Made by a program: the position numbers and the translations under genes
Assembly: GCA_965637545.1 (NCBI GenBank)
Contig: OZ281497.1
Span: forward strand, 8,866,001 to 8,930,000
Origin: Phallusia mammillata
Taxonomy: Eukaryota
Direction: 5' to 3'
DNA length: 64,000 nt
The notes under the pieces: generated by a model
Told to the model about the DNA's origin: nothing
Databases searched by the model: none
The model's input: the letters and a program-made list of their open reading frames with translations, nothing else
Shown here: positions 19,701 through 38,699 of the stretch, piece after piece
How positions within the stretch are numbered: the stretch's first letter is position 1
Layout of the letters: the number at the start of each line of letters is the position of its first letter

Positions 19701-21205
19701 AATGCTTTTTTGGCGTTTGTGATACCAATTGATACGGCATACATTACTAAACAATGCATTGGTGTACTGGTTGTTTGGTTCGATAATTTAATGAGGTATA
19801 ATCAAACCATTTTTATGTGAGTTTTTTGTATCAAACTCGTTTCATGTGAAAATAATTCGACCAAAAAAACCTTAATTTTTTATGTCTTTGTCTTACTTTT
19901 TTGTTACAAACAGTTAATGAAGGGTTACCTTGACCAGCCCGGGAAAACTGCTCAATGCATTGACTCAGACGGGTGGTTTCACACAGGTGACTACGGTTAC
20001 TATGACAGCCACGGGTATGTGTACGTCATCGACAGGATCACAGACCTTATACAGTGCGGCCAAGCAAAGGTTAAAACTTAAAAATAACACTTTTTTGAAA
20101 CTAAGTATAGTTAAATGAAGTCTAATCCTTGACAGCTACTATAAGTGTTGCTTGTGAATACTAAACTACGGTATATTGATTAGATTTGTTTTTGTCGTAT
20201 CTTTTTATGATGCTCTAAGTCTAAGAGGAAACATGGCACGTCTAATTGTAAGTTAGTACTGATTTACGTATCATTTTTTGGTATTGCTCTAGAGCAGGGG
20301 TCCGCCAATACTTTTTGGCGCGACCCTAAAAAAAATTGCTCTAAATTATCGCGACCCAAGCATTTTGTTAGCATGTAAGTTTGTGGAATATACTAAGCAA
20401 CTAGATATCAATACTATGACTGCTATTATGCTTTGGTCAGTTGCTATTTTCTTGCACAAATTAAAGCGAAACTCAGCACATAAAACAGTATGTAAACGAA
20501 CGTATTTATTCAGCAAAACGGTAACAGAAAAGCATGACCGCTTGCGCAGTTGCGCTTAACTTATTGCATTGTTACATAGACTACGCAGTGACATGTAACA
20601 ATGCAATAATAATTAGGTTGAAAATACTGAAAGTTACTATAGATACTATAAATGCAATGCTTATATTCGACCCAAATTTGGGTCGCGATCCACTATTTGC
20701 GGACCCCTGCTCTAGAGTAGAGTCTAGACATAACTTAGATTATACCAACAAATGCCCAAGCTGGCAGCTACTCATTAAAATCGAACAAAAATTACAATTT
20801 GTAAAGTTTCCAGGTAAATATACTTTATGCATGTTTTGTCCAGTTGGCACCACAGGAATTTGATAACATCTTGTTAAGTCAGCACAAAATTGCTGACGCA
20901 GCGGTGGTAGGTGTACCACATGAAGAGTTAGGGGAAGTACCTGTTGCGTTTGTGGTCAAAAAAGACGCAAACCTAACCGAGGAAGACATTTTACACCACA
21001 TCAGTGGTAAGTAGTAACTTGTGAATGTCTTCCTTTGTTAAGGCTTAATACAATATAAGCTTGTTTTTTTAATGTAGATAAAATGTATTTACACAATCTG
21101 TTACGGGGAAGGATTTGCTTTATAAAAGAAATCCCAAGAGCCGGGTACACTAAAGTTCAACGAAAACAGCTGCGGGAAAGTAGGTTATCGGACAACATAC
21201 TTTGA
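16739..21205 (+). CDS. 4-coumarate:CoA ligase / firefly luciferase-like acyl-CoA synthetase (ANL superfamily), 12 exons, frameshift in exon 2 (possible pseudogene, null allele or assembly error)
   Basis: Exons 16739-16840, 17228-17424, 17704-17813, 17898-17970, 18083-18206, 18491-18656, 18898-19066, 19355-19452, 19566-19637, 19914-20069, 20844-21006, 21078-21205. Motifs YISTSGTTGKPK, GAAP, SYGLSE, GELCVKAPQLMKGY, GWFHTGD, DAAVVGVPHEELGEVPVAFVV and C-terminal Lys (PRAGYTKV). Every junction is phase-consistent except exon 2 (197 nt, 3n+1 needed). Confidence 0.88.
20295..20709. mobile_element. hAT MITE (415 bp) in intron 10 of the ligase gene
   Basis: TIRs CAGGGGTCCGCCAATA / TATTTGCGGACCCCTG; perfect TSD CTCTAGAG (20287-20294, 20710-20717). 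Confidence 0.93.
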
Positions 21206-21219
21206 TTCCACAAGCGAAT

Positions 21220-21753
21220 GGGTGCCTTCGAATACTACAGGTGCGCTAGGTGCGCTTGGTACCCCGCTTGGTAATCATTTTTCGTACAACGTAACTTAAA
21301 AATAGTGCAGGTAACTCTCTTTGGTGCGATTAAACTCATAACAGTTACGACGTAACTCGAAAATACTGCAGCTGTCCTGTTTTTTGCGACAAATCGTAAA
21401 TACTCCAGTGAACGTTAAAACACGCATATAATGCTGGAAAAGTGTTACGATAGTCCTAACACATACCCCAAACTTAAACCCTAAACTTAAACCCTAACCC
21501 TAACCCTAACCCTAACCCTAACCCTAACCCTAACCCTAACCCTAATCTTAACCAAATCATTAAAAACAGTACCTTCAGCATTATTACGTTACGTCGCAGT
21601 AACTACAAGTTTCCTCGCTTCAAAAAAGGTTACCTGCACTATTTTAGGGGTTTGTTGCATTAAAACGAGTTACCTGTAGCATACCTAGCGAAGTACCTAG
21701 CGGACTAAGCGCACTTAGCGCACCAAGCGGACCTGCTGTTTTCGAAGGCACCG
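21220..21753. mobile_element. MITE with 9-bp TSD (MULE- or Merlin-like) carrying an internal telomere-type array
   Basis: TIRs GGTGCCTTCGAA / TTCGAAGGCACC; TSD CAAGCGAAT (21211-21219, 21754-21762); long internal inverted segments (AAATAGTGCAGGTAAC / GTTACCTGCACTATTT). Confidence 0.85.
21492..21545 (-). repeat. Interstitial telomere-type repeat (TTAGGG)9 with degenerate flanks
   Basis: Nine perfect CCCTAA units on the + strand inside the 21220-21753 element. Confidence 0.95.
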
Positions 21754-23496
21754 CAAGCGAATAAAGCTGACCGATTTGCTTCTTTTTCTTTCGAGCCACG
21801 TTTCCAAGTCCAAAAATACAATAAACTTAGTTGAAAATCACATCGTTCACGTCTTAGTTAACACATTTTTTTGGCAAGTTTAATGTGTATGTACCAGATC
21901 AGTTTGGTTGGTGCTTAAAACTGTCGGATTCTGAAGAATCTACGACCTTCTGTGGAATTAGAAAATCGAAATATGGGTGTTAAGCTTGGGCCTGAAACAA
22001 ATTCAAGCTTAGGTTATCCTCAGACAAAAGAAGACAATAATACACTTGTTGCGTTGTTTGACTGCGATTTGATGAATCTGACACGAGAATAGGTTTCATT
22101 TCATATAAATAACGGGTTCAAATCTTTGAACTTAAGTTCGCATGCACTTATTACATAGGCAAACCCGGCGCAAGAGGTTCCGCCTCTGTTCCAAAGGATG
22201 CTTTGCTTTTAAAAAAACTGGGTGATAAATACAACATCCTTCAGAATGTTATCGTTGTCAAACAAATTTTTACAGGTCAAAATGTGAAACGTGTTTTAGA
22301 CCGATCATCTACAACTGCTCATGGTTTATATTTTTGTGTTACTTGCTGCACCATTGATAGATGCATGTACGAAGACAGTAAATGCAGAACAATTTATTTT
22401 GCAATTCCACGCAATTAAGCAGAGAAATATAGTGTGGTTTTAGTAAATCTTTTATTCAGTAACCCACAATGTTTAGACAAGCCACAGCTGGTACATAATT
22501 AGTTTCCTATTAGCTATATTGAGAAACTTTTCATGATATATCTCAAGCATGTAGCTTAAGAAACTAGTTTATATAGTTTCCTCCGACGAATAAAGTTTTT
22601 TATTACTTCCCGTCATGTATAGGCCTACAACATGTCCATATAAAGCGCACTCTTTCAAAAAACTCTGTCGCAAGGCTTTTGGTTACGAATTGTGACTGTA
22701 TGGGCCAGGTATTGATGTACTATCACAAGTTTGTCATTTCTGCACACAAACGATAATTTCTTGTTTTGCCAAAAAACATCAGGATTTAGTTGTTATTTTT
22801 CCAAGTAAATCTTTTTGCAGAAGTATATTTGCAAACATGGTTTTGACAACCTCAGGCCCAAGACTTTCGTTTACTTTGTTGATTAGTGAAAAAGATCAAT
22901 GTTAACTAGTAACTTCCGGAAAGCTAGTTAAAAGGCGAAACTAATGTATATAGACATCACCTGATTGTGTGTTGCCGCTACAGAAAAAACAATGAACTTT
23001 TACTGCGAATACATATAAGGTCAAGCCTAAGTTGACTCTAATATAGTTAACATAAACATAATAGGGGGAAACCTGCCAGCTGTCGACAAACGGAAGTTAG
23101 CTGAGCGTGTGAAGTGACAAAGTGCACAACCTTCTAGCCTTTACAGGATGAAGACCTCTAAAGCTGCAGTTGACCAAAGCTTGCAGTACATTAAAAGAAC
23201 ACAGTTGCCGTTAGACACGTACAAAGTACAACACAGACTTTAAAAGAAGAAACTTGGCGAGCCAAAGCGTTGTTGGAAAGAATAATGGTCATTGTGGTGA
23301 AAGAATAAATTAGAATACATTTTGAGACAGTGAGTTAGAACGTGCGCACAAAGACATTCAGTATTTGCGTTTACCTAATGATAATTTCGAACAATTTACC
23401 GAGTCAAAACTAGAAACAGTATGACCACCAGTAACGTGCATTTTTCATCATTTTTTTCGTCATTTTTTATTTTTCGCAGAACACTGACAAATAAAC

Positions 23497-24180
23497 ATGG
23501 CCGAAGCGTTAACTGATAAATTTGAGGTCAAGAGCCTGACTATGGAAGACTACGAGAAAGAGGTCGCCGATTTCATTCAGGAGTTTTACACAAAAGGCGA
23601 CGTGCTTTTCCAAGCCTCAAATTCGACGTTGGAGGACGAAAATGGCATTTACGAGTTTCGGGCAAAAGTAGCCATCCAACATCATGGAGCTTCATTTGGG
23701 ATGTACGAAAAATCTACAGGAAAGCTAGTGGCGGTCAAGGTGAATTTCGTGCACAGCAAAAACTGCACCAGCACCCCTACCAGCATGCTGAGCGAGAAGT
23801 ATAGCTCAGAGAACATGTCCGAAAATGCCGAAGTTGTGATTCGTTTTGTAGACGTTTTTTTGGGCGACGTCTTTACTGAATTGCAGACCGACAAGTACAT
23901 GGAACTAGGCATGACCTGCGTTCATCGTGATTTTACAAAACTAGGAATGGCAACTTATCTAGGCAAACTTAGCGAGATCAGAGCCAAGGAACTGGGGTGT
24001 CAGTACTTGGTGTCGTTTGCAACTTCGGCGTACTCTCAGAAGATATGCGCCAAATTCGGATTTACACTCCTCCGTGAGATTGTGTACGCAGACTACGTTG
24101 ATAAACCTACTGGCAAAAAGCCCTTCAAATCAATTCCTGGACAAACGCACGCAAGGCTCTTTTACCAAAAAATATGCTGA
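23497..24180 (+). CDS. GNAT N-acyltransferase resembling insect-type arylalkylamine (dopamine) N-acetyltransferases, 227 aa, single coding exon
   Basis: Acceptor TTTTCGCAG ends at 23479, just before the ATG. C-terminal LGMTCVHRDFTKLGMA...ATSAYSQKICAKFGFTLLREIVYADY resembles insect Dat/AANATL (ILSVD..YRGLGIA...CSSHYSARVMEKLGF....FADY). Confidence 0.8.
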   Translation: MAEALTDKFEVKSLTMEDYEKEVADFIQEFYTKGDVLFQASNSTLEDENGIYEFRAKVAIQHHGASFGMYEKSTGKLVAVKVNFVHSKNCTSTPTSMLSEKYSSENMSENAEVVIRFVDVFLGDVFTELQTDKYMELGMTCVHRDFTKLGMATYLGKLSEIRAKELGCQYLVSFATSAYSQKICAKFGFTLLREIVYADYVDKPTGKKPFKSIPGQTHARLFYQKIC

Positions 24181-26187
24181 GCAATAGTATGACTGTGTGG
24201 CAAGCTTAGTAGGCACTGAACAACTGCAGTTTTTCTTCGAACTGTATGAAAACATAATTTAGCACCCCTGCATTAATGCTTTACTGTTAATTCTGAACAC
24301 AAACATCATACCATTTTACAAGCCTTTCAAAGCAACCGGACACTGACGTTGTTACGTGTCAATGGTGCCGCCTGTGACATCACAACCATCATCATGCAGC
24401 AAGACTTTTCGTTGCTAAGTTTTTGCTAACGATTTGGTTAACTATTTTAACAAATAATAGCCAGTAATGTTATCCAGTCTTGAATATCCCATATACCATT
24501 CTAGGAAACTCCATTTTGATGAATATGTTTGTTATTTTGCAACGTTGCGTCAGAATGATAATGTGCTGAAAGTCGTTGTACGTGCTAGCGCTAAATATAT
24601 ATAACACAGAACATGACTCGATTAGAATGGGTTGTCATAAATTACAGTGTCGTACAACGGACAAATGCCTTGAACTCTACAGTGCACGCACCAAAGATGT
24701 TTGTTGGCGTTTGAAACCGTGTATATTTGCAAAAGGCTATTTTATGCATAAACAACTACAGTAATTTGTTTTTCGCAAGCGTTGTGACGTCAGCTAAATA
24801 AACAGACGTTGAATTGATGTAGATGGCGTTCGTGTGACGTATTTTGAGTTGTTTTCAAAGGAAAACGAACTAAACAGACTTTAGTAGCTACCATTAGTAT
24901 CAATTTTGAGCACAATGTTAAACGCTGAATCAGTATTACGGCTTCGTCATTCAATACGTGAAGCACTATAATTTTAACGGCTGTCAAAGCACAGGCCTGT
25001 CTCCCTGTAGGCTTGGAACTGATTTGCATTAAGTTTGGTGACGCGATGGTGTGAGTTTATAGCGTAGCGCGCAGTTAATGCTGGTGCTTAAATTCTATTT
25101 TTTGACGAGGTGGATCAAGCGAGTTCATGTTTGTTTTACAAAGCTTTATAACAATCTTTTACGTCGCATTAAAGCGCGTAAATTGCAACATGTCATAGCT
25201 GTAGTAGTACAAGCTTTCTGACAGGCAGGTAACAAAGAGAGTGCGAATATCTGTTTTAAGGTTTTTCATTGCAGGCAAAAAGCATTACGCTTTGAGATTC
25301 ACATTTGTGTGTTTATATTACTTTGACAGCAAGAAAGCCTTTAGTTATTTACGAAAAGGGCTACTTCGCAAATCCAATCGTTATGAGTGCCACATAGTTC
25401 GAAATTAGTCGTACTATGCAAAAATATGGTAAGTTTTGTTCAATAACTCTTTCAACGTATGTTCGACATCGCTATAAAAAAAAATTTTTAGTTTTTGGTA
25501 CGAATACAGAGTTGTTTTCACTCACAGCGCAGCACACGCAGTCGTCATTCATTGGCAGCATATCATATGATTCGTCTTTCACTCACAGCATGACAAAATA
25601 GTCGTTTCTTTTTGTGGTGCCTTTAGCCAGGTGGGGATTGGAGGCAAGACTCACAGCCCATTGTCTAGTTATAAAGGTGCAAAAGCAGTTTAAATTAACT
25701 CGCAAGTAACCAGCTTAGGGCCTATATAATAACATTTGTATTGTCATTACAACATAAATTGTTAGCACAAAGATAGTATTTGGGTGTGAAACATCACAAT
25801 AATTCGGCAGTTCCTATTGTCCTCCCTTCTGTTGGTTTTATTTCACCTAACGATGACAATACAAACCTTCGAAATGTTATGATGTTTTACACTCAACTAC
25901 TGGCTTGTATAATTTGCTCACAACAATTAGAATCGTACATTGTGTACCTACGTGAGGTTCAACATTGTACATTAACACGCTTGTCCGCACAAAATTAGTA
26001 AATATGGGCGCAGCCCTTTTCAGGAATTATGCCAACGTAGGTACGAATAACAATTTTCAAGAGAAGGTTTAATTGCGTCAACTTACAAAAAGAGAATTTA
26101 GTGACTAAAGACTAAACTTAGATATTAAATATTTTTTACCTCAAACAGGTACCACGTGCCCAAAATAGCTAACACAATAAACGTAGT

Positions 26188-26895
26188 ATGACACCGAATT
26201 GTGACGCACGTTTACTGCTACAACGTATATCCGCCCAACATAATGACGCGATGCCTTTTCTGAACCGAATCGTCAACTACAACGTCACAGTTGACCCATT
26301 GTATGAAACAGCTCAGTCAAGCATCGATAAATGCACAAAATGGGAAAATTTCAGACTTGGCGGAGCGTTGAAGAAAAACGGCGCATTTGTGTATGAAGAA
26401 ATTGGTTCAAAGCGAATTGCTTCAATGCTCATTCGCTCAGCTCACGACTGTCGCGCTCCAAATACTTCCCTGCTGTTGGAATATGCAAAATTAAAACCTG
26501 ACAATCTGGGAAATCCCCTCGATGCGATTCTGGAATTTACAGGGCAAGTAGCGAAGGAAACGTTGCAGGACGTAAGGACTAACCGGTATGTGTGTTTAAA
26601 GGCGCTGTATACCGACGAACACTTTGTGAGACAGGGTTTAGCCCGTTCTTTGTTGTATAACAATGAAGTATGGGCGCGTTATCAAGACTACGACACTGTT
26701 TTAGCCTTAAGTACCTCAAGACATTTGACTAGCTTGCTGGAAACCTCCGGTTATACTTTGCAAAGAAGTGAACAGTTGCCAAAATTTGCAGAAATGAGCA
26801 AGGTCAACCAGAGATGTGGAAAACCTGTTGTCAAATCCCAAGCATTTTTGTGTGTGTTTGTTAAACGTTTGTGTAGATTTATTCCCAAGCTTTGA
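26188..26895 (+). CDS. Second, divergent GNAT N-acyltransferase (AANAT-like), 235 aa, single coding exon
   Basis: Acceptor ends at 26148. YVCLKALYTDEHFVRQGLARSLL (motif A, RQGLA) and LSTSRHLTSLLETSGY parallel the upstream paralog; similar length. Confidence 0.68.
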   Translation: MTPNCDARLLLQRISAQHNDAMPFLNRIVNYNVTVDPLYETAQSSIDKCTKWENFRLGGALKKNGAFVYEEIGSKRIASMLIRSAHDCRAPNTSLLLEYAKLKPDNLGNPLDAILEFTGQVAKETLQDVRTNRYVCLKALYTDEHFVRQGLARSLLYNNEVWARYQDYDTVLALSTSRHLTSLLETSGYTLQRSEQLPKFAEMSKVNQRCGKPVVKSQAFLCVFVKRLCRFIPKL

Positions 26896-27885
26896 TGTAA
26901 AAGTGATGGATCGTTATTGAGCTATGAAAGGTTTTCTTGAGTCGAAAACCGCTTCATGTGACCAAAAACGTTTTTTATTTCTGTATTATTTCATATGCTG
27001 GGCCTTGAGCCAAAAAAGAGAAACATGACTTTTGATTTTAATACACGTCAATCTGCATTCTACGTATACATTGTCATATACATCATTTCTTTTTTTAATT
27101 TACTTTTTTATGGTTTGATTTTGTGCTCCTTTTCATCTGTTAATGCCATGGTAACAAATAATTGCTTTTACAACCTGGCGAATATACTTCACACCCTATT
27201 ATATGTGGATTATATTGTTTTCAACTGTCCAAACCAAAAAATCACTTTTGCAAAAGTTACATCATATTTGACACCTAAACCTAAATCCTTTGACCCAAAC
27301 TGATGTAAAGCATATTACATCGCAGATTACAAAGAGACTGTACAAAGCTAACTTCGTGGAAGTGCCGTTAGCTGCGATTTTTCCGTGAGGAAACACTAAA
27401 AAACAATATTTTGACATGCTCAAAGAAATAATATATTTGCACCGTAACGTAACATATCAACAGTGAACTTTCACGAAGAAACCTATGTCGACAGATAATT
27501 TGCAACAAACATAAAGAACAGTTTAGAAGCGTGTAGATTACAAATAAAACGAGAATTTAAACATGAATGCTGAATGTAACCAAAATCCAACACTGGTTAA
27601 ATTTAGGCAGAACCTTGCAACTGAGATGTATGGAAGCAAACCTTTGCCTGTTAGGTTCAATGATTGACTATACTGTTATGCCAGTGATTAATTTTGTGTT
27701 TTTAGTGCTTATGTGGTGTTCAACATTGGCAACAACTCAAGAACAGCAACAGCGCAAAAAATATTTCATCAACTTCGCTGGGCGAGACTTTGCTAAAGAA
27801 CAAAATACGCGTTGACAGCGGCAGGAAACGCGCATAACAAGTGCCTCAAATTTAATTACTCTATGACGTCATAAAAGGCGTTACG

Positions 27886-30800
27886 TCACATGTTGCTAGG
27901 GGTTTGTTCGCTGACAGATTCTGTTGATTCCTGGCCGCTGGCAGTGGCATTGTTTTTTGGTTCTTCAACTTCGCTCATTCCTTTCAGTTCAAGAATATCT
28001 AGAGTTTGTTGAATTCTCCTAACTGCTGCCTTCCTCCTGCTTCTGACGTCGTCTTCTCCAGGAGCACCACTAGCACTTACACCATCAAGTTGGATCAATT
28101 TTCTTGTAAGCATCTCCTCCAGTTTAAGATATGTTTTCTCTCCCTTATGTCCGTTGAATAGATCCACCTCTTTCTCAATAGTATCCAAGTCCTCCAATAC
28201 AGATTCGATTTTCTTTTTTGCCGCTGCAACACGATGGTCTTCTTCTGGAGCTGGTTGGGCGACCTTTTCCTCGGGTTTGGTTTGTCGGTTCGGTACTGGT
28301 GGCATAGAATCGCTTGATACTTGTTTCGTTTTCCCGTTTTGTGACGGTGATTTAGTGGATTTGGAAGACGATACGGTTTTTCCTGCTGATGGTATAGGTT
28401 GACCCGGCGATTGGTGAATCACTTGAATGGGAACAACTCTTTCCTTCGGTTGCTGGCTCTATATAAAAGAAATGATAATGTAAAAAACGAGCAACATCTA
28501 TTAATACCCATGTCTCAATGCAGTTACACACAGAAATGTAAAATGACTTAAAACAACAAAACAAACAGTCACACCATAACCGTTTGGTCAATGTATGCAA
28601 TCAGCACGCAACTAGGTGGGGTTACGAGGGCAATGTGACGGTACGTGACGTCACATCATAACAAGGTGTATTACATGCACGAGACAAAAAGGGTCAGCGC
28701 TCAAACCAGCGTAAAACAGCTGTCAGTGACTTAAAGCCTGCATAGGACGGACGTGAAATGGCGATGAAAGCCCATGGGACAGGAGACATGCTCAGTGACT
28801 GTGAAGTCATAATTGCGCGGCGACAATGACGCTTTTGACGTGGATCATTAAATTCAATATGATTTGGTAAAGGTAATGACATTAAGAGGCCATATAGGTT
28901 GGTTCTGCTTCGTTTGCATAAATCGAGTGTTTCTATTACATGCTTAAATGGGATACAAAAGGAAGTTTGCTGCTGAAAACGATGGTTTGGGTAAATCCTG
29001 TTGACGCAAAGGCAGTGACATGCATAGCAGTTATAAACAACAGGCAAATGACAGTGAAACCACTCGCAAGTCCCAAGCCAATCCAAGCCTGTTGAACCTC
29101 AATATTTGATGGTTCCGTTGACGTTTTTAACTCCACTGGCGAAAGCTCAGTCTCAAGTATGCCAGTCCCATCTTCAATAAAATCAGGGGGTGCATCTGGA
29201 CCATCTACAGATGTGTTGTCTTCAGGAGTTTCGTTCAAGGAAGCACCGTGACTAGATTTTTCCGGCGAAGGTGTAGTAATGCGATCAAACGGCACGGGAT
29301 CGCCTGGACTTTGCGCAGTAATACTAAGTTCGCCTTCTAAAGACTGATCGCTGGGAGAATCGGGTAAAAACGGAAGGGGTATGGCAGGGGGCGCATGGGG
29401 TATTGAAGAAGGGGTAACACAATCTGCCGTGGTACTAGAGACCGGGGTTTGCCTACGTGTGGGCTGTTCAATCATCACTGTAACAGGTTGCGGTTCGCAA
29501 ACATCAGGATAAACAAACTTCTCAGGCTCAAGCCCTACATGTTGCACTGGTATAGAAATACAACTATTTGGAGAACGTACTTGCGCAGGTCTTTGGTCTG
29601 ATGAGGAAAATTGCTGGTGCGATGGCTGTTGTTGCTGTTGTTGGTATTGATATTGCCCTGATTGGTGAGGATAAAATCCGGGCTGCTGCATCCTTGCATG
29701 TTGATACTGTGGCTGTGGTTGTGGCATATTTCGTGGATTATGTTGTCGTTGTTGTTGCCATTGCTGCTGAGATGGTGGCACCCGCTCGTGCTGAACTGGT
29801 ATCGTACGAGATTGCTTTGCTGTGTTCTGTACACAAGGGAATATAGGGTCAAGTTCGTTAAGCTAATAAAATCGTTTGCCTTTGCCAACTAAACGTATTG
29901 CGTATTTGCCACACGAAAGCAAAAATTTATTAAAAGTTTTCCAGTGTAAAAATGTTGTGTGCATGCTGGACAATAAACCTAAGTTTTAACACACATAGGG
30001 ACATGCAAAATTAACGATAATGACAGATTCGATTATCACCTAGCAAATTAGAGCCACAGTAATCTGAACATTTCTAACACTCTTTCGACTAAAATACCAA
30101 AGCGGTTACACTCAATTTTAAAGTAATCCTGAATCGCTAGCCGAATTTTGATACGCCTAAAGTGGTTGTGATAAATTCGAAAAACCCGTTTACTAATACT
30201 TTTGGAGTCTATAAAAGTTGACTGCAACGTTTGATGGTTAAGCTTGCCTAAACCTGTACATTATAACTCGCATTTTGTATTTGAGAAACAAAATGCTACT
30301 ACAGTCTAACATAGTCTAAAACACTAAAATTCAAATGCATTTATTGTCAAATTATAAACAAAACTGTTCACCGTACCATATTCCTTTCTTTATCCATTGG
30401 AACTGTTAACACTGGGCTTGGCGCTTGTTGCCTCTTCATAACATCAACGAACATAGCTAACAACCGCTCTCTTGAACTTAGTTTAGGCGAAAATTCGCTA
30501 TTCAATAATCGCTAAGCGTTCTTAAGGACTCGTCGAACAAATAACACTCTGCGACTGTAGGCTGTTTTTATAGCACGCTCGTTGTGACGTCACAGCGGAC
30601 CAGACGAGCCGAGATTATTCGAGAACTGCGGCGACTGTTTGAGCACATTCGACGTTCGTTAATCGCATTTTTTGGCTTGCAATGACTGGTGTTTGAAAAT
30701 AGTGGCTCTTTTGTACCGATCGGGCCTCAAAATTTTTCCTTTTGTATTTAGCGGATAGATAATTTTCTTTTAATAAACTGGCTAAATCAGACAACACATT

Positions 30801-31582
30801 ATTATTACATTTCGTTTTCTGGAAAGCTACATTATTAAAATTTTTATCTTCTGGTGGATCTGTTATTACCTGTCTTGCTAAAAAATGCATTTATGATGCT
30901 GGTTTCTGTCTACTGTTACTTCGCATTAAAAAAATGAAAAGATCGTAATTTTTTGTTTATTTCTAAAACTGTGCAATAAGTGTCCAAGCAACTAACCACT
31001 TTCTACATTATAAATGCAATTATTTTACACAAAAACAGACTTACCTTAGATTTACACAAAAACAGACTTACCTTAGGAGGCCTTGGGTCAGTCCAGGTTG
31101 TTGTCCTCGAGTTGTGGTCAATAAAGAATGGCCATTTAGAATTGTCATCTATTCGCATCTCCCAACCTGCAGTTTTATTAATTTGCTATGAACATACCAA
31201 TCCATAAAAACAGCAGCTTACATTTGTGTCAAAAAAATTATTTAGATTTATGAAAAACATTAAGTCAGTTGTTCCAAAGGCTTTATGAGATATATGACTC
31301 CCTAACAGCAAGCATAGCAAATCATATTGATGCAACTGTATGCATTAAGTATTACAAATATAATACATGTAAGATTCCTCAGTAATTATAAGCAGGTTAG
31401 TTTCACATGTATTTTAGAATACGTAGGGCTAACATTTAATTTAGTAGGAAACCTTATTGATTTTCCACAGGATTCATTGTTTTATATACAATATCTACCT
31501 TTACATCAAACACACCTGGCGGTAAAGGTTCATCCAATCGTAGATCAGGCGGTTTGGGAAATCCTGATTGAAATTGTGACAT
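27886..31582 (-). CDS. BAG3: BAG family chaperone regulator 3-like (WW + IPV motifs + Pro-rich + BAG domain)
   Basis: Exons 31582-31516 (MSQF...DEPLPP), 31166-31072 ([31 protein letters not shown]), 29826-29098 (RTIPVQH, ISIPVQH, PxxP; the 29098 donor is inferred) and 28458-27886 (VVPIQV; BAG domain [10 protein letters not shown]...[18 protein letters not shown]...[20 protein letters not shown]). Phases are consistent. Confidence 0.9.
30377..30454 (-). CDS. BAG3: Alternative first coding exon of BAG3 ([26 protein letters not shown]) giving a WW-less isoform
   Basis: ATG-initiated 78-nt exon ending ATG|GTACGG, phase 0, compatible with the acceptor at 29826. TATA and CRE motifs lie upstream. 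Confidence 0.55.
30565..30592 (-). promoter_or_regulatory. Candidate internal BAG3 promoter: CRE palindrome TGACGTCA (30585-30592) plus TATAAAAA (30572-30565)
   Basis: Both motifs read directly, about 110-140 nt upstream of the alternative ATG at 30454. Confidence 0.5.
31024..31076. repeat. 27-bp tandem duplication of the BAG3 WW-exon splice donor
   Basis: TTTACACAAAAACAGACTTACCTTAG occurs twice, giving CTAAG|GTAAGT twice on the minus strand. Confidence 0.9.
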
Positions 31583-31880
31583 AGCAACAGAAATCAATAT
31601 TCAGTATATTTTAAGCCAATGCCCAAGTATTTTTTTGTTATAAAACAGGATAATTTACTTGTAAAATTAGTGCCAACACCTGTAAAGTGTCAAATATTAG
31701 AAAAGTGAATGCATTTCAATATTGGCAGCTTATATTGTGCAATTAAAAAACACACAAATATGATTGTGTAAAATTAAATGTAAATGGGCAAAATCGGTGA
31801 AATGCAATAAACTCTTGTCACTCACAGTGCTAAACACATAGTGTACAAAAAGCAAACATTGAAAAGTGTACTAAAACTTG

Positions 31881-34800
31881 CTACTTTGTGGCTGATTGTA
31901 GATCCTGAATTTCCTCCTCAAGTGTATTGATTTTCTCATTTCTCTGAACTGTGGCCGCTGCAATAATCTGCTGGGCCTGTTTGAATGACATGTACTGTAT
32001 GTCACGTACCAAAATATCTGGTGATGCTGTGGCAAGTTTGTGAAGATTGTGATATCCTAGTTTGTGCAATTGCTTAGCTCTAGCAAGCTTCACACCAGGA
32101 ATTTCCATCAACATTGTCAGTTCTGGTGAAGTACTAAACTGCAAGGATTTCATTACTCTTTCAAAAAGTGCTGTATATGGCCAAAACTTTTCTACTTCTT
32201 CAGTAAAATGCAAAGTGCTTGAGGCAAAAGCAACTGTGCTTGATAACAAGTTTTGAAGAAAACCTCTTGGCTGATTAAACTGTGAGGCAACATCCCATAT
32301 CGAGCGACCTTTGTACAGCTGGTACAGCATGATTGTAACATAAAACCGTCTAAACACCAGTTCATTAACTTTGGTCTTTCTCAAATTTCTGCCTGATGCT
32401 TTAAGTGCAATATAATGTTCAGAAATCCCCACAGCAGACGCTGCTTTGACATCACCAGGGGAAAAATTATTCATTTCATTTAAGTACATCAGCCAGTTAG
32501 GGTCAACAGAGTGTGCTGCTTCATAAGGGGTCACGAGGTATAATAAATGGAAATAATTCTCCAAGACTAAGCCATGCAGCCCATGTTCCAAGTCATGAAA
32601 TAGTAACTCACTTATGTTAATATCCACGGAACCTTTATGCACAGCACAACCTATAGTGGATATCTCTAAAGCACCATCATCTGTTTGGGACACAAGGTTC
32701 AGTTCCAGTAGTTCCTTCAATGAATTGTCAACAATACTACTGATAACATTGCTTGATTTCTCACCAATAGCATCCAACATACCAGGTGACGCCTGTTTTA
32801 TCGTGGACACCTGCTTTGAAAACAGTGTATGTTGAAAATAGTCACACACATCAGACTGGCTTTTAACCACTCTAAGACCAATTAGGTTTAGCAGAAGTGC
32901 TTTGAAACCTTTGCCATTGTCATACATCATGCTGCTTAAACACATCTCAATGTGTCCACTTAACAAATGTTTCACCTTTTCTTTGTCTCTGTTGTCAAAT
33001 ATTAAGAAACTTTCACCTTTTGTGTCAATACCAGCTCTGCCGGCACGACCAATCATTTGTTTGTATTGTGCACAGGTCATAAATGAACGACCAACATATG
33101 GTGAGCGGATAATGACCCTTCTAGCTGGTAAGTTGACTCCTGCAGCTAGGGTAGATGTGCATGTAATTACAGATATCGCACCACTTCTGTACGCATTTTC
33201 AATTAGTTGCCTTTCATCAGATGTTAAACCACTGTGGTGATAGGCAATACCATAGGGAATAGTACCTTGCAAAATCGGACATATAACACCATCAGATTGT
33301 AAATACATTTCATTCAAAAGTGTCATTTTTTCCTTTTCTTTGTGTGTAAAAAATGTTTTAGGCAATAGCTTACAAATTAATACTGCAACATTCTCACAAT
33401 TCTTTTTCGTTGGACAAAACACAAGGCAAGAATGGTCAGGCACAACTTCTTTTATTAACGTAGACAACTGATCAGAATCAGCTTTTTCAGTTTCCTTTGT
33501 CTCCGAAAATATAGTGCGGACATGTGTCAGTTCTTCTCCAGCCCTTAACTTGTTGCTATCTACCTCATAGATATGATTGTCCACTTTAACATATTCAGAT
33601 AATTCTACAGGCCTGAAATCATCAGTAAATGTCTGTGCATTCAGAAAAGATGCCAGTTCATCAATATTTCCAATTGTAGCAGACATGCCTACAATCTGAC
33701 TGTCAGGATTTTGATGTATGACCTTTGTTAACATAGATTCCAATGTAGCACCGCGCTTTCCACCTTCCCCTAGCATATGCAACTCATCAACAACATACAA
33801 ACCTATTTCCTCCAGCCTTTGCTCATCAATAAGTGAGTTTACCAATGAGTTGGCTTTTTCCATAGTGCAAATGTAAAGCACATTTTTAGATCGCCTTTTT
33901 CTTGGAGGGAACCTGCCTTTGCTACCAGCATATTCTTCAACAAGAAAATCACACTCCATAGCGAATAATGCAATACTTTGAACCTTTTCTTGAGCTATAG
34001 CAACAAATGGAACGACCAAAACTGCATTTTTATGTTTACACAATATAGTCCGCATTATCAATATTTCAGCTACTAAAGTTTTTCCACCACTGGTAGGCAA
34101 GGAGTAAATTAGGTTTTGACCTGAGGTTACACCATCCATTGACAAGCACTTGTGTTGCCAATCATACAATGTATCAATTCCCCTTGAAGATTTTAAAAGC
34201 TCTTTCACTCTCTTTGGCAAACCATAAAAATCTTCCTCATTGTGCGTCAATTGGTTGTCATGTTTTTTTATTGGTTTAATCATTGGCGAAACCTGTGCAT
34301 TGTTTTGCAACTTTTGCCTTATTCGATCTGACAAGTTTGATATAACTTTTGTATTTTTTGGAGTGGAGGTCGACATATTCTCAAACAGTTTTTCGGCAAA
34401 AGGTGATGATGCTTCTGTGTGTTTGCTTTTAATGTTATTACTTGTTTCAGTTGAATCAACTTGTGTCAAAACTGTAGCCTGTTCTTCAGCTTGAGGAGCA
34501 AAACATTGCTTCTCCAGTAATGATAAATCAACATTGTCAAACACAGAGTCTTGTAGTATGCTCATTTCATGACTGGAATTGCACAGTTTGTTATGTTTTG
34601 TTCCTTCATCACTTCCTGTTTCCATAAAGTAATCTACATCATTTTCATTCTGTTCAAACAATGAAGGTGACCCAGATCTGGCAAGATTGTTTTTTGATAC
34701 TGTTTTGCTTTCTTGTTTTGGGGAAAGTGAAGATTTACTGTTAACAAGTGGCACTGTGGCTTTGCTTTTCATGTCATTGCTGAATATTTCTACACTGCTA

Positions 34801-34883
34801 TTAGAGTCTAGCAATGAGAGCTGAGTCAGACTTGATTTTCTTCGCTTTTTACTGAGACGCTTTGGGGTGTTTCTTGTCTTCAT
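31881..34883 (-). CDS. HELQ: Helicase POLQ-like (HEL308), 1000 aa, intronless
   Basis: Single ORF with SF2 motifs SLPTSGGKT, VVDELHML, GMSATIGN, AYHHSGL, TSTLAAGVNLPARRV, QMIGRAGRAG and C-terminal HhH (EIPGVKLARAKQL). No polymerase domain, so HELQ rather than POLQ. Confidence 0.95.
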   Translation of the reverse strand: MKTRNTPKRLSKKRRKSSLTQLSLLDSNSSVEIFSNDMKSKATVPLVNSKSSLSPKQESKTVSKNNLARSGSPSLFEQNENDVDYFMETGSDEGTKHNKLCNSSHEMSILQDSVFDNVDLSLLEKQCFAPQAEEQATVLTQVDSTETSNNIKSKHTEASSPFAEKLFENMSTSTPKNTKVISNLSDRIRQKLQNNAQVSPMIKPIKKHDNQLTHNEEDFYGLPKRVKELLKSSRGIDTLYDWQHKCLSMDGVTSGQNLIYSLPTSGGKTLVAEILIMRTILCKHKNAVLVVPFVAIAQEKVQSIALFAMECDFLVEEYAGSKGRFPPRKRRSKNVLYICTMEKANSLVNSLIDEQRLEEIGLYVVDELHMLGEGGKRGATLESMLTKVIHQNPDSQIVGMSATIGNIDELASFLNAQTFTDDFRPVELSEYVKVDNHIYEVDSNKLRAGEELTHVRTIFSETKETEKADSDQLSTLIKEVVPDHSCLVFCPTKKNCENVAVLICKLLPKTFFTHKEKEKMTLLNEMYLQSDGVICPILQGTIPYGIAYHHSGLTSDERQLIENAYRSGAISVITCTSTLAAGVNLPARRVIIRSPYVGRSFMTCAQYKQMIGRAGRAGIDTKGESFLIFDNRDKEKVKHLLSGHIEMCLSSMMYDNGKGFKALLLNLIGLRVVKSQSDVCDYFQHTLFSKQVSTIKQASPGMLDAIGEKSSNVISSIVDNSLKELLELNLVSQTDDGALEISTIGCAVHKGSVDINISELLFHDLEHGLHGLVLENYFHLLYLVTPYEAAHSVDPNWLMYLNEMNNFSPGDVKAASAVGISEHYIALKASGRNLRKTKVNELVFRRFYVTIMLYQLYKGRSIWDVASQFNQPRGFLQNLLSSTVAFASSTLHFTEEVEKFWPYTALFERVMKSLQFSTSPELTMLMEIPGVKLARAKQLHKLGYHNLHKLATASPDILVRDIQYMSFKQAQQIIAAATVQRNEKINTLEEEIQDLQSATK

Positions 34884-36898: not shown

Positions 36899-37079
36899 AA
36901 CAAAAAAACTTTTGTTTTATTTAAAGTAGGAAAGAAAGAAACAGCACAGGAGATGCCCCTGGTGAATTCATTTATTAACTTAAAAAAGATAAATAAAAAA
37001 CATATTTTTTAATCATAGCTTTGTAAGTTTTAAATTTTACAGTTTTGTTTGGTCTAAAGTGGACATACAAAAAACCTTG

Positions 37080-38699
37080 ATGTCTACTAGTGTTAACCCT
37101 AAACACAGAACATTTCTGTCAAATGACTTCAACAGCAAAAAAACTCAGACCTGGGCTGCAATTAGCATTGGTGTAGTCATTTTTGCATTTGGCATTCCTA
37201 TTTGGTGGAAGACTACTGAAGTTTACAGGGCTTCTTTGCCATTTGATGAAATCTCTTCATTGTATGAAGATAAAAGTCTGATTGTAAAGGTTCCAATATT
37301 GGTAAAAGTTCCAGAAAATGCAGACAATGTTGCAGACATTCTTACCAACGCATTAAAACTTGATTTAAATAATGACATGAAAGGTCAAATAAAGTTTTTG
37401 TACAGCTTTGATGATATGAATTCCAAAAGTAACAAGTTTACTGGCATTGTAATTAGGTTACATGTCAAGTCAACTGAACAGATGGAAGCACATGTAGCCA
37501 AAGATGGGACAATCACATGCACTCTACCAAATACAGAAAAGAACACAATCGATCAATTATCATTACTTATTAGGGATTTAATCAAAGATGTCATTATTAA
37601 CGAAGCCCTCTTGCATCATATGGTTGGAAACATTTATCGAACCACACATGAGGATCGACATGACAGAAATCTAATTAAAATGGTGCAAGCCAATCCAAAA
37701 TTTGAGCTATTGTTTTCCTTGCTCTGTCCAGAGCCACAAGTTCAAGCTGCAACCTGGGACATGGAAAAAGACTCTGAAATGTTTTTGACACCAATGTTAA
37801 ATAAACTACAGCATTTGTTTGATTTTCATGTCGGATCTCAGATTTTATACTACACCGCTATACCGTACAAGCCCAAAGTAAAAAAGGATGAACAAAATAA
37901 GGCTTTGTATCGGTACCTCACACCACAACAGTTGTCATTGGTGATAAACCCAATTGAAGGTCGACTTGGATCACAAGTGTCTTCAGATCCAACACTAAAC
38001 TTTGTCGTTTATCTTACTGAAAAAAAGTTTACACCATTGTACATTAAAACTGAGAATGGTGACCTTTCCAAAAGTAATGCTTTTCTGGTCCCAAGATGGG
38101 GCTCAATGCAGTTCTACAACATAAAAAACATAAGTGAATCAAATGGCCTGACAAGAGTTGATCCTCAAATATTTATGAGTGCATTTATTCCCCATCTCCG
38201 TATTCTTCTTGGCTTGCAAAATAATCCATATGTTGGGGAACAGATCATTTTCGAGGATGCTGGGTATGAAAATATAGCAGACTGGGAATTAAACTACTTG
38301 TACAGGCTAAGAACTGTAGAGCATATAGCCTCTTCAATTCACACGCTCCACTCATTGTCAAAGCTTTTAAATCAAATCAGTAACATAGTGATAAATGACA
38401 ATATTGCCACTGAGGTGTATGATGCTGTTGAATCAATAATCAAAGCCAAAGCTGCACTTAAAAATGGTGACCTTGAGACTGCTTTGAAATATTCGAAAAA
38501 AGCGTTTATAGCTTCTGAAACTGCATTTTTTGACCCTACTCTATTGGAATTACTGTATTTTCCAGAGGACCAAAAATTTGCAATTTATATTCCACTATTT
38601 CTGCCAATTAGTTTACCAATATTGATTTCCTTACGCTACGCTTTTCAAAGATGTCGCAAAAAGGATTTTGATGAGGAAGAAAAAGAAAAAACTGATTAA
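37080..38699 (+). CDS. PIGS: GPI transamidase component PIG-S, 539 aa, intronless CDS
   Basis: ATG at 37080 after the acceptor TTTTACAG (37042). N-terminal TM (IGVVIFAFGIPIWWKTTEVYRASLP), AFLVPRWG, ASETAFFDPTLLELLYFPEDQKFAIYIPLFLP and C-terminal KEKTD ER-retrieval-like motif all match PIG-S. Confidence 0.96.
   Translation: MSTSVNPKHRTFLSNDFNSKKTQTWAAISIGVVIFAFGIPIWWKTTEVYRASLPFDEISSLYEDKSLIVKVPILVKVPENADNVADILTNALKLDLNNDMKGQIKFLYSFDDMNSKSNKFTGIVIRLHVKSTEQMEAHVAKDGTITCTLPNTEKNTIDQLSLLIRDLIKDVIINEALLHHMVGNIYRTTHEDRHDRNLIKMVQANPKFELLFSLLCPEPQVQAATWDMEKDSEMFLTPMLNKLQHLFDFHVGSQILYYTAIPYKPKVKKDEQNKALYRYLTPQQLSLVINPIEGRLGSQVSSDPTLNFVVYLTEKKFTPLYIKTENGDLSKSNAFLVPRWGSMQFYNIKNISESNGLTRVDPQIFMSAFIPHLRILLGLQNNPYVGEQIIFEDAGYENIADWELNYLYRLRTVEHIASSIHTLHSLSKLLNQISNIVINDNIATEVYDAVESIIKAKAALKNGDLETALKYSKKAFIASETAFFDPTLLELLYFPEDQKFAIYIPLFLPISLPILISLRYAFQRCRKKDFDEEEKEKTD

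What the first reader, a model, noticed from the sequence alone, without database searches (positions are those of the whole stretch)
28936..29097. BAG3 exon reads through a weak donor into a 53-codon extension encoding a transmembrane helix, suggesting a membrane-anchored, BAG-less isoform
Seen: the large BAG3 exon stays open past the inferred phase-0 donor GAG|GTTCAA (29098/29097) to a TAA at 28936 and encodes [30 protein letters not shown], a hydrophobic stretch of about 20 residues near the C-terminus. Splicing instead joins the BAG-domain exon at 28458. Established: BAG3 is a soluble co-chaperone linking HSPB8 (IPV motifs), WW ligands and Hsp70 (BAG domain), and I know of no membrane-anchored form. 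Inference: intron retention would give a tail-anchored IPV/PxxP scaffold that recruits small HSPs to a membrane without binding Hsp70.
Basis: partly seen in the sequence, partly recalled or inferred. Interest (0 to 1): 0.7.

Follow-up and report, generated by a model that had tools for sequence, protein, structure and literature searches.

The report
Retained last intron of ascidian BAG3
The 53-codon "membrane tail" is the start of the last intron of the sea squirt Phallusia mammillata BAG3 gene; a minority of transcripts keep this intron, but the tail is absent from two related species and is about what chance gives, so the finding is ordinary.

Summary
The sequence observation is correct. 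The large exon (29826-29098, minus strand) stays open for 53 codons past the donor GAG|GTTCAA to a TAA at 28938-28936. The extension holds an uncharged run of about 22 hydrophobic residues. The gene is the Phallusia mammillata BAG3 orthologue (WW, IPV motifs, BAG domain). A deposited 489-aa protein and spliced contigs in four RNA runs confirm the junction 29098 to 28458.

Three of those four runs also hold unspliced contigs across the whole intron (28459-29097). The gene's other introns have no contig cover, so low-level retention of this last, weak-donor intron is real.

The membrane-anchor reading is not supported:
- The read-through is 39 unrelated, non-TM codons in one relative and 8 codons in another.
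- The extension DNA does not align between species, although an 87-nt block further down the same intron does.
- A null built from the intron's own T-rich composition gives an open, TM-like read-through in 1-5% of trials.

- An internal donor at 29581 (CAA|GTACGT) removes 161 codons in frame. It is used in all four runs, and the donor site is conserved in both relatives.
- A conserved alternative first exon (30454-30377) bypasses the WW domain.

Interest is low.

The parts
31516..31582 (-). Exon 1 coding part of the WW-containing isoform (ATG at 31582-31580). The 5'UTR reaches at least 31636. Donor is CAG|GTGTGT.
   Evidence: Sequence; matches the first residues of P0001; joint 31164/31514 (cut +2) in three runs and contigs reaching 31636.
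31072..31166 (-). Exon 2, encoding the WW domain. Donor is AAG|GTAAGT.
   Evidence: Sequence; Pfam WW PF00397, E 6.9e-11, at residues 20-50 of P0001; joints 31164/31514 and 29826/31072.
30377..30555 (-). Alternative first exon. Its ATG is at 30454 and it encodes 26 codons ending in phase 0 at ATG|GTACGG. It splices to 29826 and gives an isoform without the WW domain.
   Evidence: Joint 29826/30377 in X1, X5 and X8, with contigs reaching 30536-30555; sequence; the peptide is 83% conserved in L001 at 180-248.
30566..30592 (-). Promoter-like elements of the alternative first exon: TGACGTCA at 30592-30585 and TATAAAA at 30572-30566, about 15-30 nt upstream of the contig ends.
   Evidence: Sequence; TGACGTCA match; the same arrangement at the start of L001. 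Promoter function is inferred.
29098..29826 (-). Exon 3 in its long form, 243 codons. It carries two IPV motifs ([15 protein letters not shown]), a Q-rich stretch and a P-rich stretch.
   Evidence: 98% identical to residues 55-299 of P0001; joints at both ends.
29098..29580 (-). Part of exon 3 removed by the internal donor CAA|GTACGT (29581|29580). The removal is 483 nt, or 161 codons, in frame. It takes out the second IPV motif and the P-rich region.
   Evidence: GT..AG joint 28458/29581 in all four runs, at depth similar to the canonical joint; the donor is conserved in phase 0 in L001 and L002.
28459..29097 (-). Intron 3, the last intron, 639 nt. It has a weak donor GTTCAA and the acceptor tatag. 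Most transcripts remove it; a minority keep it whole.
   Evidence: Joint 28458/29098 in four runs. Unspliced contigs: X1 28528-29127, X5 28452-28691 and 28666-29127, X17 28748-29066; none in X8.
28936..29097 (-). The finding itself: a 53-codon read-through frame plus TAA at the 5' end of intron 3, with an uncharged hydrophobic run at residues 4-25.
   Evidence: no Pfam family; no conservation.
28758..28844 (-). Conserved non-coding block inside intron 3, downstream of the TAA. It has CRE-like half-sites (ACGTCA; TGACTTCA here, TGACGTCA in L001).
   Evidence: blastn gives 81.6% identity over 87 nt, E 7e-20, against the L001 intron. It is the only significant match in the intron. A 2-nt gap breaks any shared frame.
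27886..28458 (-). Exon 4 coding part: the VVPIQVIH motif, the BAG domain and the stop TGA at 27888-27886. The 3'UTR continues to about 27409-27494.
   Evidence: Pfam BAG, E 1.4e-17; matches the C-terminal part of P0001; contigs 27409/27490-28458 in all runs.

Best explanation
The stretch 28936-29097 is the first 162 bases of the last intron of the Phallusia mammillata BAG3 orthologue.

Most transcripts remove the intron by an ordinary GT-AG splice. Its donor, GAG|GTTCAA, is very weak: it has no purine at +3 and no G at +5. The donor also competes with a strong in-frame donor 483 nt upstream in the same exon (CAA|GTACGT).

Because the donor is weak and the intron is the last one, a minority of transcripts keep the whole intron. 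I infer that these transcripts persist because no exon junction lies downstream of their stop codon to mark them for decay.

The open 53-codon frame and its hydrophobic run are a by-product of the T-rich intron sequence, not a selected coding segment. The gene's real, conserved isoform variety comes from the alternative donor at 29581 and the alternative first exon at 30454-30377.
For: **Canonical product**
- P0001 (UniProt A0A6F9D866, Phallusia mammillata) reads ...PSNIE|[12 protein letters not shown]....

**RNA evidence**
- Four runs from four studies show the 28458/29098 joint and the 28458/29581 joint, so they are RNA.
- Three of them also hold unspliced contigs across intron 3, at roughly 6-21% of the exon-4 word depth. 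This is a rough measure.
- The other introns (29959-30280, 30603-30924, 31247-31407) and the downstream spacer (27061-27221) have zero cover in all four runs. That excludes DNA contamination and shows the retention is specific to this intron.

**No conservation**
- The read-through is 39 codons in L001 (KD maximum 1.26) and 8 codons in L002.
- The peptides do not align.
- The MAFFT alignment of the extension needs gaps of 2, 6 and 15 nt.
- blastn finds nothing in the extension but finds an 87-nt block at 28844-28758.
- For comparison, exon 4 is 69% identical at protein level.

**Chance level**
- 1-5% per intron of this composition.

**Weak donor is shared**
- All three species have a donor with T at +3: GTTCAA, GTTTTG and GTTAAG.

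**Precedent**
- Human BAG3 is a published example of a transcript with intron retention after heat shock (PMC5224492).
Against: - Retention is selective for this intron and not negligible, so some read-through protein may be made.
- The hydrophobic run is good enough (KD 2.17, no charges over 43 residues) to be called a TM helix by any predictor. It sits at a tail-anchor-like distance from the C-terminus.
- The per-site chance of open plus this hydrophobic is only 0.3-1%.
- Both relatives are fairly distant (53-69% protein identity in the exons), so a young, species-specific coding gain cannot be excluded.
- Contigs cannot show whether the unspliced RNA is polyadenylated, cytoplasmic or translated.
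Confidence: 0.85

Rival explanations
1. This is a regulated ('detained') intron. The weak donor is kept by selection so that a pool of unspliced BAG3 RNA can be held back or finished on demand, for example under stress, or so that the upstream donor can compete. The RNA event is functional but the encoded tail is irrelevant. This overlaps with the best explanation on what the peptide is.
For: - Only this intron is retained.
- A weak donor with T at +3 is present in all three species.
- Retention differs between runs, from none in X8 to about a fifth of exon-4 word depth in X1.
- Human BAG3 shows heat-shock intron retention (PMC5224492).
Against: - No condition-resolved data: the runs are coded and their libraries are not on record.
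- Contig depth is a poor measure of level.
- Last introns with weak sites are retained passively in many genes.
- Two further species sharing T at +3 is weak evidence for selection.
Confidence: 0.2
2. Intron retention yields a functional, BAG-less, tail-anchored BAG3 isoform that carries the IPV and P-rich scaffold to a membrane. It would be a recent gain specific to Phallusia mammillata.
For: - Unspliced RNA exists in 3 of 4 runs.
- The stop lies in what becomes the last exon, so escape from junction-dependent decay is expected (inference).
- The TM-like run has KD 2.17 and 28 residues follow it.
- No intron variants were seen in the three runs that cover it.
Against: - Neither the frame nor the sequence is conserved in two relatives.
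- The extension evolves like a neutral intron while a nearby block is conserved.
- The pattern is expected by chance in 1-5% of introns of this composition.
- The extension has no Pfam or other family, and no paper with the search terms describes a membrane-anchored BAG3.
- There is no evidence of export or translation.
Confidence: 0.05
3. The intron cover comes from a separate transcript that starts at an internal promoter, the conserved CRE-like block at 28844-28758. That transcript would run into exon 4 and give a BAG-domain-only product. It would not be retention in full-length mRNA.
For: - A conserved 87-nt block with CRE-like sites.
- A full TGACGTCA at 28653-28646.
- The gene's alternative promoter has the same motif.
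- The X5 contig 28452-28691 runs from the intron into exon 4.
Against: - Contigs in X1 and X5 extend upstream of the block, through the extension and into the last 30 letters of exon 3 (to 29127). X17 covers 28748-29066. So at least part of the cover continues from exon 3.
- No TATA-like element follows the block.
Confidence: 0.07

Closest known systems
Vertebrate BAG3 (BAG family molecular chaperone regulator 3)
   Same: It has the same order of parts: an N-terminal WW domain, IPV motifs, a P-rich middle and a C-terminal BAG domain. The human gene also shows intron retention under heat shock (PMC5224492).
   Different: - The ascidian gene has a conserved WW-less isoform from a second first exon.
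- It has an in-frame internal donor that removes the second IPV motif and the P-rich region.
- It carries a third IPV-like motif (VVPIQVIH) just before the BAG domain.
- Orthology was not tested by a tree.
Retained or detained last introns with weak 5' splice sites
   Same: The whole intron is present in a minority of RNA and the other introns of the gene are clean. The donor departs from the consensus at +3 to +6, and the stop has no downstream junction.
   Different: Regulation, nuclear detention and polyadenylation status could not be tested with contigs.
Tail-anchored membrane proteins
   Same: On paper the read-through product has one hydrophobic segment near the C-terminus and no N-terminal signal-like run.
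   Different: The segment lies in an intron and is not conserved in relatives. It is within chance for this composition. Nothing shows translation or membrane insertion.
Alternative 5' splice sites inside a coding exon (exitron-like in-frame shortening)
   Same: Donor 29581 and donor 29098 share the acceptor at 28458. Both are phase 0, and both were seen in four runs.
   Different: This is the event that actually operates at this exon, and it is not the one the finding proposed. A 281-aa WW+BAG protein from another tunicate (P0006) has the short architecture as its only known form.

Membership tests
BAG3 co-chaperone | C-terminal BAG domain | tested here: met
   Pfam PF02179: E 1.4e-17 on the exon-4 translation and E 4.4e-17 on P0001.
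BAG3 co-chaperone | N-terminal WW domain | tested here: met
   Pfam PF00397, E 6.9e-11, at residues 20-50 of P0001. It is encoded at 31166-31072.
BAG3 co-chaperone | IPV motifs that bind small heat-shock proteins | tested here: met
   The motifs [15 protein letters not shown] and VVPIQVIH can be read in the translation and are conserved in L001 and L002. Binding itself was not tested.
BAG3 co-chaperone | Orthology shown by phylogeny against the other BAG paralogues | not tested
   No tree was built. The assignment rests on domain order alone.
Tail-anchored membrane protein (the proposed retention isoform) | A single hydrophobic segment of about 20 residues within about 30-40 residues of the C-terminus | tested here: met
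   KD 19-residue maximum 2.17 at residues 6-24 of the extension, with 28 residues after the run. No dedicated TM predictor was available.
Tail-anchored membrane protein (the proposed retention isoform) | The segment is part of a mature, translated mRNA | not testable with these tools
   Contigs show unspliced RNA in 3 of 4 runs. They cannot show polyadenylation, export or translation.
Tail-anchored membrane protein (the proposed retention isoform) | The segment is kept as coding sequence in relatives | tested here: not met
   The read-through is 39 unrelated codons (KD 1.26) in L001 and 8 codons in L002. There is no DNA or protein alignment.
Intron retention | Continuous RNA cover of the whole intron reaching into the flanking exons, with the other introns of the gene uncovered | tested here: met
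   Contigs: X1 28528-29127; X5 28452-28691 plus 28666-29127; X17 28748-29066. Introns 1 and 2 and the spacer have zero cover. The exon-side overlap is 30 letters, one short of the tool's formal bridging rule of 31.
Intron retention | Retention is regulated by condition or compartment | not testable with these tools
   The runs are coded, their libraries are not on record, and contigs carry no reliable level.
Alternative 5' splice site | Two GT donors joined to one acceptor in RNA, keeping the frame | tested here: met
   Joints 28458/29098 and 28458/29581, both CT..AC on the plus strand, appear in all four runs. Both are phase 0 by reading.

The most novel reading that the evidence does not exclude
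Phallusia mammillata has recently gained a BAG-less BAG3 isoform by retention of its last intron. The chance-born hydrophobic tail would anchor the WW/IPV/P-rich scaffold to a membrane, which would make it a young, species-specific tail-anchored co-chaperone fragment.
Probability: 0.05. Interest if true: 0.5.

Novelty: already known. Interest (0 to 1): 0.15.

Why it matters
As it stands, the result corrects a gene model reading and is not a discovery. The proposed membrane-anchored BAG3 is most likely the translation of an intron.

The useful output is a checked isoform map of an ascidian BAG3 gene:
- two first exons, one with and one without the WW domain;
- two donors in exon 3, one keeping and one removing the second IPV motif and the P-rich region;
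- a selectively retained last intron with a weak donor shared by three species.

Phallusia eggs are transparent and take injected mRNA, so this map would let someone test what the WW domain and the second IPV motif add. Only if the retention product proved to be translated and membrane-bound would this say something new about BAG3 biology.

Tried and rejected
- **Other donors or a hidden exon inside the intron.** I looked for donors such as CAT|GTAATA at 28940 that could make the extension part of a spliced exon. No joint other than the five listed appears in any of the four runs.
- **Coding potential of the conserved intronic block.** A 130-aa ORF (28694-29086) in another frame spans it. It has no Pfam family. 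The L001 counterpart loses the frame after a 2-nt gap. I rejected it as coding.
- **Intronic polyadenylation.** This could explain why the X1 intron contig ends at 28528. No AATAAA lies nearby, and X5 covers through to exon 4. Rejected.
- **DNA contamination as the source of intron cover.** Rejected, because the other introns and the spacer have zero cover.
- **Word search with exon 3 plus the extension.** It found only P0001 and P0002. Neither carries the extension: P0001 is the spliced form and P0002 is another species' own read-through. The length filter (163-518 aa) would hide short fragments, so this is not proof of absence.
- **Look-up of P0001 in the contig collection.** It gave nothing.
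- **Accession DRR090687, the source of L001.** It is not mentioned in the paper library, so the relative's species name is unknown. The species behind L002-L006 (metagenome contigs) is also unknown.
- **The large representative protein search.** Not used, since the family scans and the relatives had already settled the question.

Full report
**1. What is in the sequence**

On the minus strand the reading frame of the large exon is open from the acceptor at 29826 (acag|AAC) to a TAA at 28938-28936. The proposed donor GAG|GTTCAA lies at 29098|29097 in phase 0, and 53 sense codons follow it.

The extension has no charged residue for its first 43 positions. It holds a hydrophobic run at residues 4-25, with a Kyte-Doolittle 19-residue maximum of 2.17, and 28 residues follow the run.

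The next exon starts at 28458 in phase 0 and carries a BAG domain (PF02179, E 1.4e-17).

**2. What gene it is**

A word search with exon 3 plus the extension found a 489-aa Phallusia mammillata protein, P0001 (UniProt A0A6F9D866). Its source calls it "extensin", which is a misnomer. It is 98% identical over the exon, and Pfam finds WW and BAG domains in it.

P0001 reads ...PSNIE|[12 protein letters not shown]..., which is the splice from 29098 to 28458. From P0001 and the sequence, the coding exons are:

| Exon | Coordinates (minus strand) | Content |
|---|---|---|
| 1 | 31582-31516 | Start codon |
| 2 | 31166-31072 | WW domain |
| 3 | 29826-29098 | RTIPVQHE, Q-rich run, SIPVQHV, P-rich region |
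| 4 | 28458-27886 | [11 protein letters not shown] domain, stop |

This is the BAG3 domain order, so I treat the gene as the ascidian BAG3 orthologue. I did not build a tree.

**3. RNA evidence**

Run searches found many runs of one organism whose contig sets total 12-33 million letters. I laid four of them, from four studies, on 26900-31700. All four show GT..AG joints, so they are RNA. The joints were:

| Joint | Runs | Meaning |
|---|---|---|
| 28458/29098 | 4 | Canonical splice |
| 28458/29581 | 4 | Internal donor in exon 3 |
| 29826/30377 | 3 | Alternative first exon to exon 3 |
| 29826/31072 | 3 | WW exon to exon 3 |
| 31164/31514 (cut +2) | 3 | Exon 1 to exon 2 |

Three runs also hold contigs that are colinear with the genome across intron 3:
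- X1: 28528-29127, word depth 7.2
- X5: 28452-28691 and 28666-29127, word depth about 8.4
- X17: 28748-29066, word depth 2.8
- X8: none

The exon-4 contigs have word depths of 34.6, 89.6, 46 and 23.9 (X1, X5, X17, X8). The unspliced form is therefore very roughly 6-21% where it is seen. The tool warns that contig depth is a poor measure.

The other introns of the gene and the spacer downstream (27061-27221) have zero cover in all four runs. So the intron cover is not DNA contamination, and retention is specific to this last intron.

The X1 and X5 contigs reach 30 letters into exon 3. That is the k-1 overlap expected of a branch in the assembly graph. It is one letter short of the tool's formal bridging rule of 31.

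**4. Why this intron**

The donor matches the metazoan consensus MAG|GTRAGT at only 2 of the 7 variable positions: it has T at +3, C at +4, A at +5 and A at +6. The gene's other donors are GTGTGT, GTAAGT, GTACGG and GTACGT.

The intron is also the last one. In a retaining transcript the TAA therefore has no exon junction downstream, and escape from junction-dependent decay is expected. That step is inference from established knowledge.

Human BAG3 is a published example of a transcript whose introns are retained after heat shock (PMC5224492).

**5. Is the tail conserved?**

Two relatives were recovered:
- L001 is a 2.6-kb Logan contig from run DRR090687. It is colinear with the gene from the alternative first exon to the BAG exon. 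Exon 4 is 69% identical at protein level.
- L002 to L006 are 8.5-8.9 kb contigs from metagenome assemblies. They belong to a more distant tunicate with the same WW exon, exon 3 and BAG exon.

The read-through compares as follows:

| Species | Donor | Read-through | KD maximum |
|---|---|---|---|
| P. mammillata | GAG\|GTTCAA | 53 codons | 2.17 |
| L001 | CAG\|GTTTTG | 39 unrelated codons | 1.26 |
| L002 | GAG\|GTTAAG | 8 codons | not applicable |

The two longer peptides give no BLASTP alignment at E<=100. The MAFFT alignment of the extension needs gaps of 2, 6 and 15 nt.

blastn between the two introns finds nothing in the first 162 nt. It does find an 87-nt block at 81.6% identity (E 7e-20) at 28844-28758, downstream of the TAA. 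The intron therefore contains a constrained element, but the extension is not it.

**6. Chance**

- Translating from every GT in the window until a stop gives at least 53 codons at 7% of sites. Open plus KD>=1.6 occurs at 1.2% of sites, and open plus at least the observed KD at 0.33%. This null includes real coding sequence.
- A first-order Markov null built from the intron's own composition (35% T on the sense strand) gives 11.9% open, 4.8% open with KD>=1.6 and 1.0% open with at least the observed KD.
- The opposite strand of the same stretch is also open for 51 codons, which fits a compositional cause.
- A genome-wide scan should meet many such introns.

**7.

- **An internal donor in exon 3.** CAA|GTACGT at 29581|29580 is phase 0 and joins the same acceptor. 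It removes 161 codons, including SIPVQHV and the P-rich region. Its word depth is similar to the canonical joint in every run: 35 vs 16, 40 vs 54, 8 vs 12 and 20 vs 14. The donor is conserved in phase 0 in L001 (CAA|GTACGT) and L002 (CAA|GTAGGT). A 281-aa WW+BAG protein from another tunicate, P0006, has just this short architecture.
- **An alternative first exon.** Its ATG is at 30454 and its donor at 30377. It encodes 26 residues and joins exon 3 directly, giving a WW-less isoform. It is the only 5' exon seen in X1. It is 83% conserved in L001. TGACGTCA and TATAAAA precede it in both species.

**8. Verdict**

- The functional reading, a membrane-anchored BAG-less isoform, fails the conservation test and is within chance.
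- I put 0.85 on plain intron with passive or regulatory retention and a chance ORF.
- I put about 0.05 on a functional, species-specific anchored isoform.
- No paper with the search terms describes a membrane-anchored BAG3.
- The earlier-findings look-up returned only an unrelated note on 16739-26895.

Noticed in passing
window 28758-28844 (minus); L001 1682-1766: An 87-nt block inside the last BAG3 intron is 82% identical between two ascidian species while the rest of the intron does not align. It carries CRE-like sites, and a 2-nt gap rules out a shared reading frame. It may be an intronic enhancer or an internal promoter.
   Followed up: partly
window 2303, 24785, 27864, 28646, 30585, 43359, 49298: The palindrome TGACGTCA occurs 7 times against 0.66 expected from shuffles. 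Three of the seven lie in the BAG3 gene: at the alternative promoter, in intron 3, and 15 nt after the stop codon.
   Followed up: partly
window about 31024-31078 (minus): A tandem duplication of about 27 nt includes the exon-2 donor (CTAAG|GTAAGTCTGTTTTTGTGTAAA, twice). RNA joints use only the first copy, at 31072.
   Followed up: partly
window 31881-34883 (minus): An uninterrupted 1000-codon ORF encodes a HELQ/POLQ-like helicase (Pfam DEAD, Helicase_C, HTH_61, POLQ_helical, HHH_5). It ends about 300 nt upstream of the BAG3 start codon. An intronless form of this gene is unusual for an animal.
   Followed up: partly
window 37059-38699 (plus): An uninterrupted 546-codon ORF encodes the GPI transamidase subunit PIG-S (Pfam PF10510, E 9e-125). 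It too appears to be a single exon.
   Followed up: partly
P0001 (UniProt A0A6F9D866): The deposited Phallusia protein is named 'extensin', probably because of its P/Q-rich middle. By domains it is a BAG3-like co-chaperone. It differs from the window by a two-residue PQ insertion and two substitutions.
   Followed up: yes
window 27801; 28348; 29157; 29389; 29391: Allelic differences appear in the RNA contigs: a 9-nt insertion in the 3'UTR in X17 and four single-base differences in exons 3 and 4. No differences were seen in the contigs that cover intron 3.
   Followed up: no
window 26900-27060: RNA contigs in all four runs run off the low end of the laid stretch. They belong to a neighbouring transcript downstream of BAG3, and I did not look at it.
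   Followed up: no
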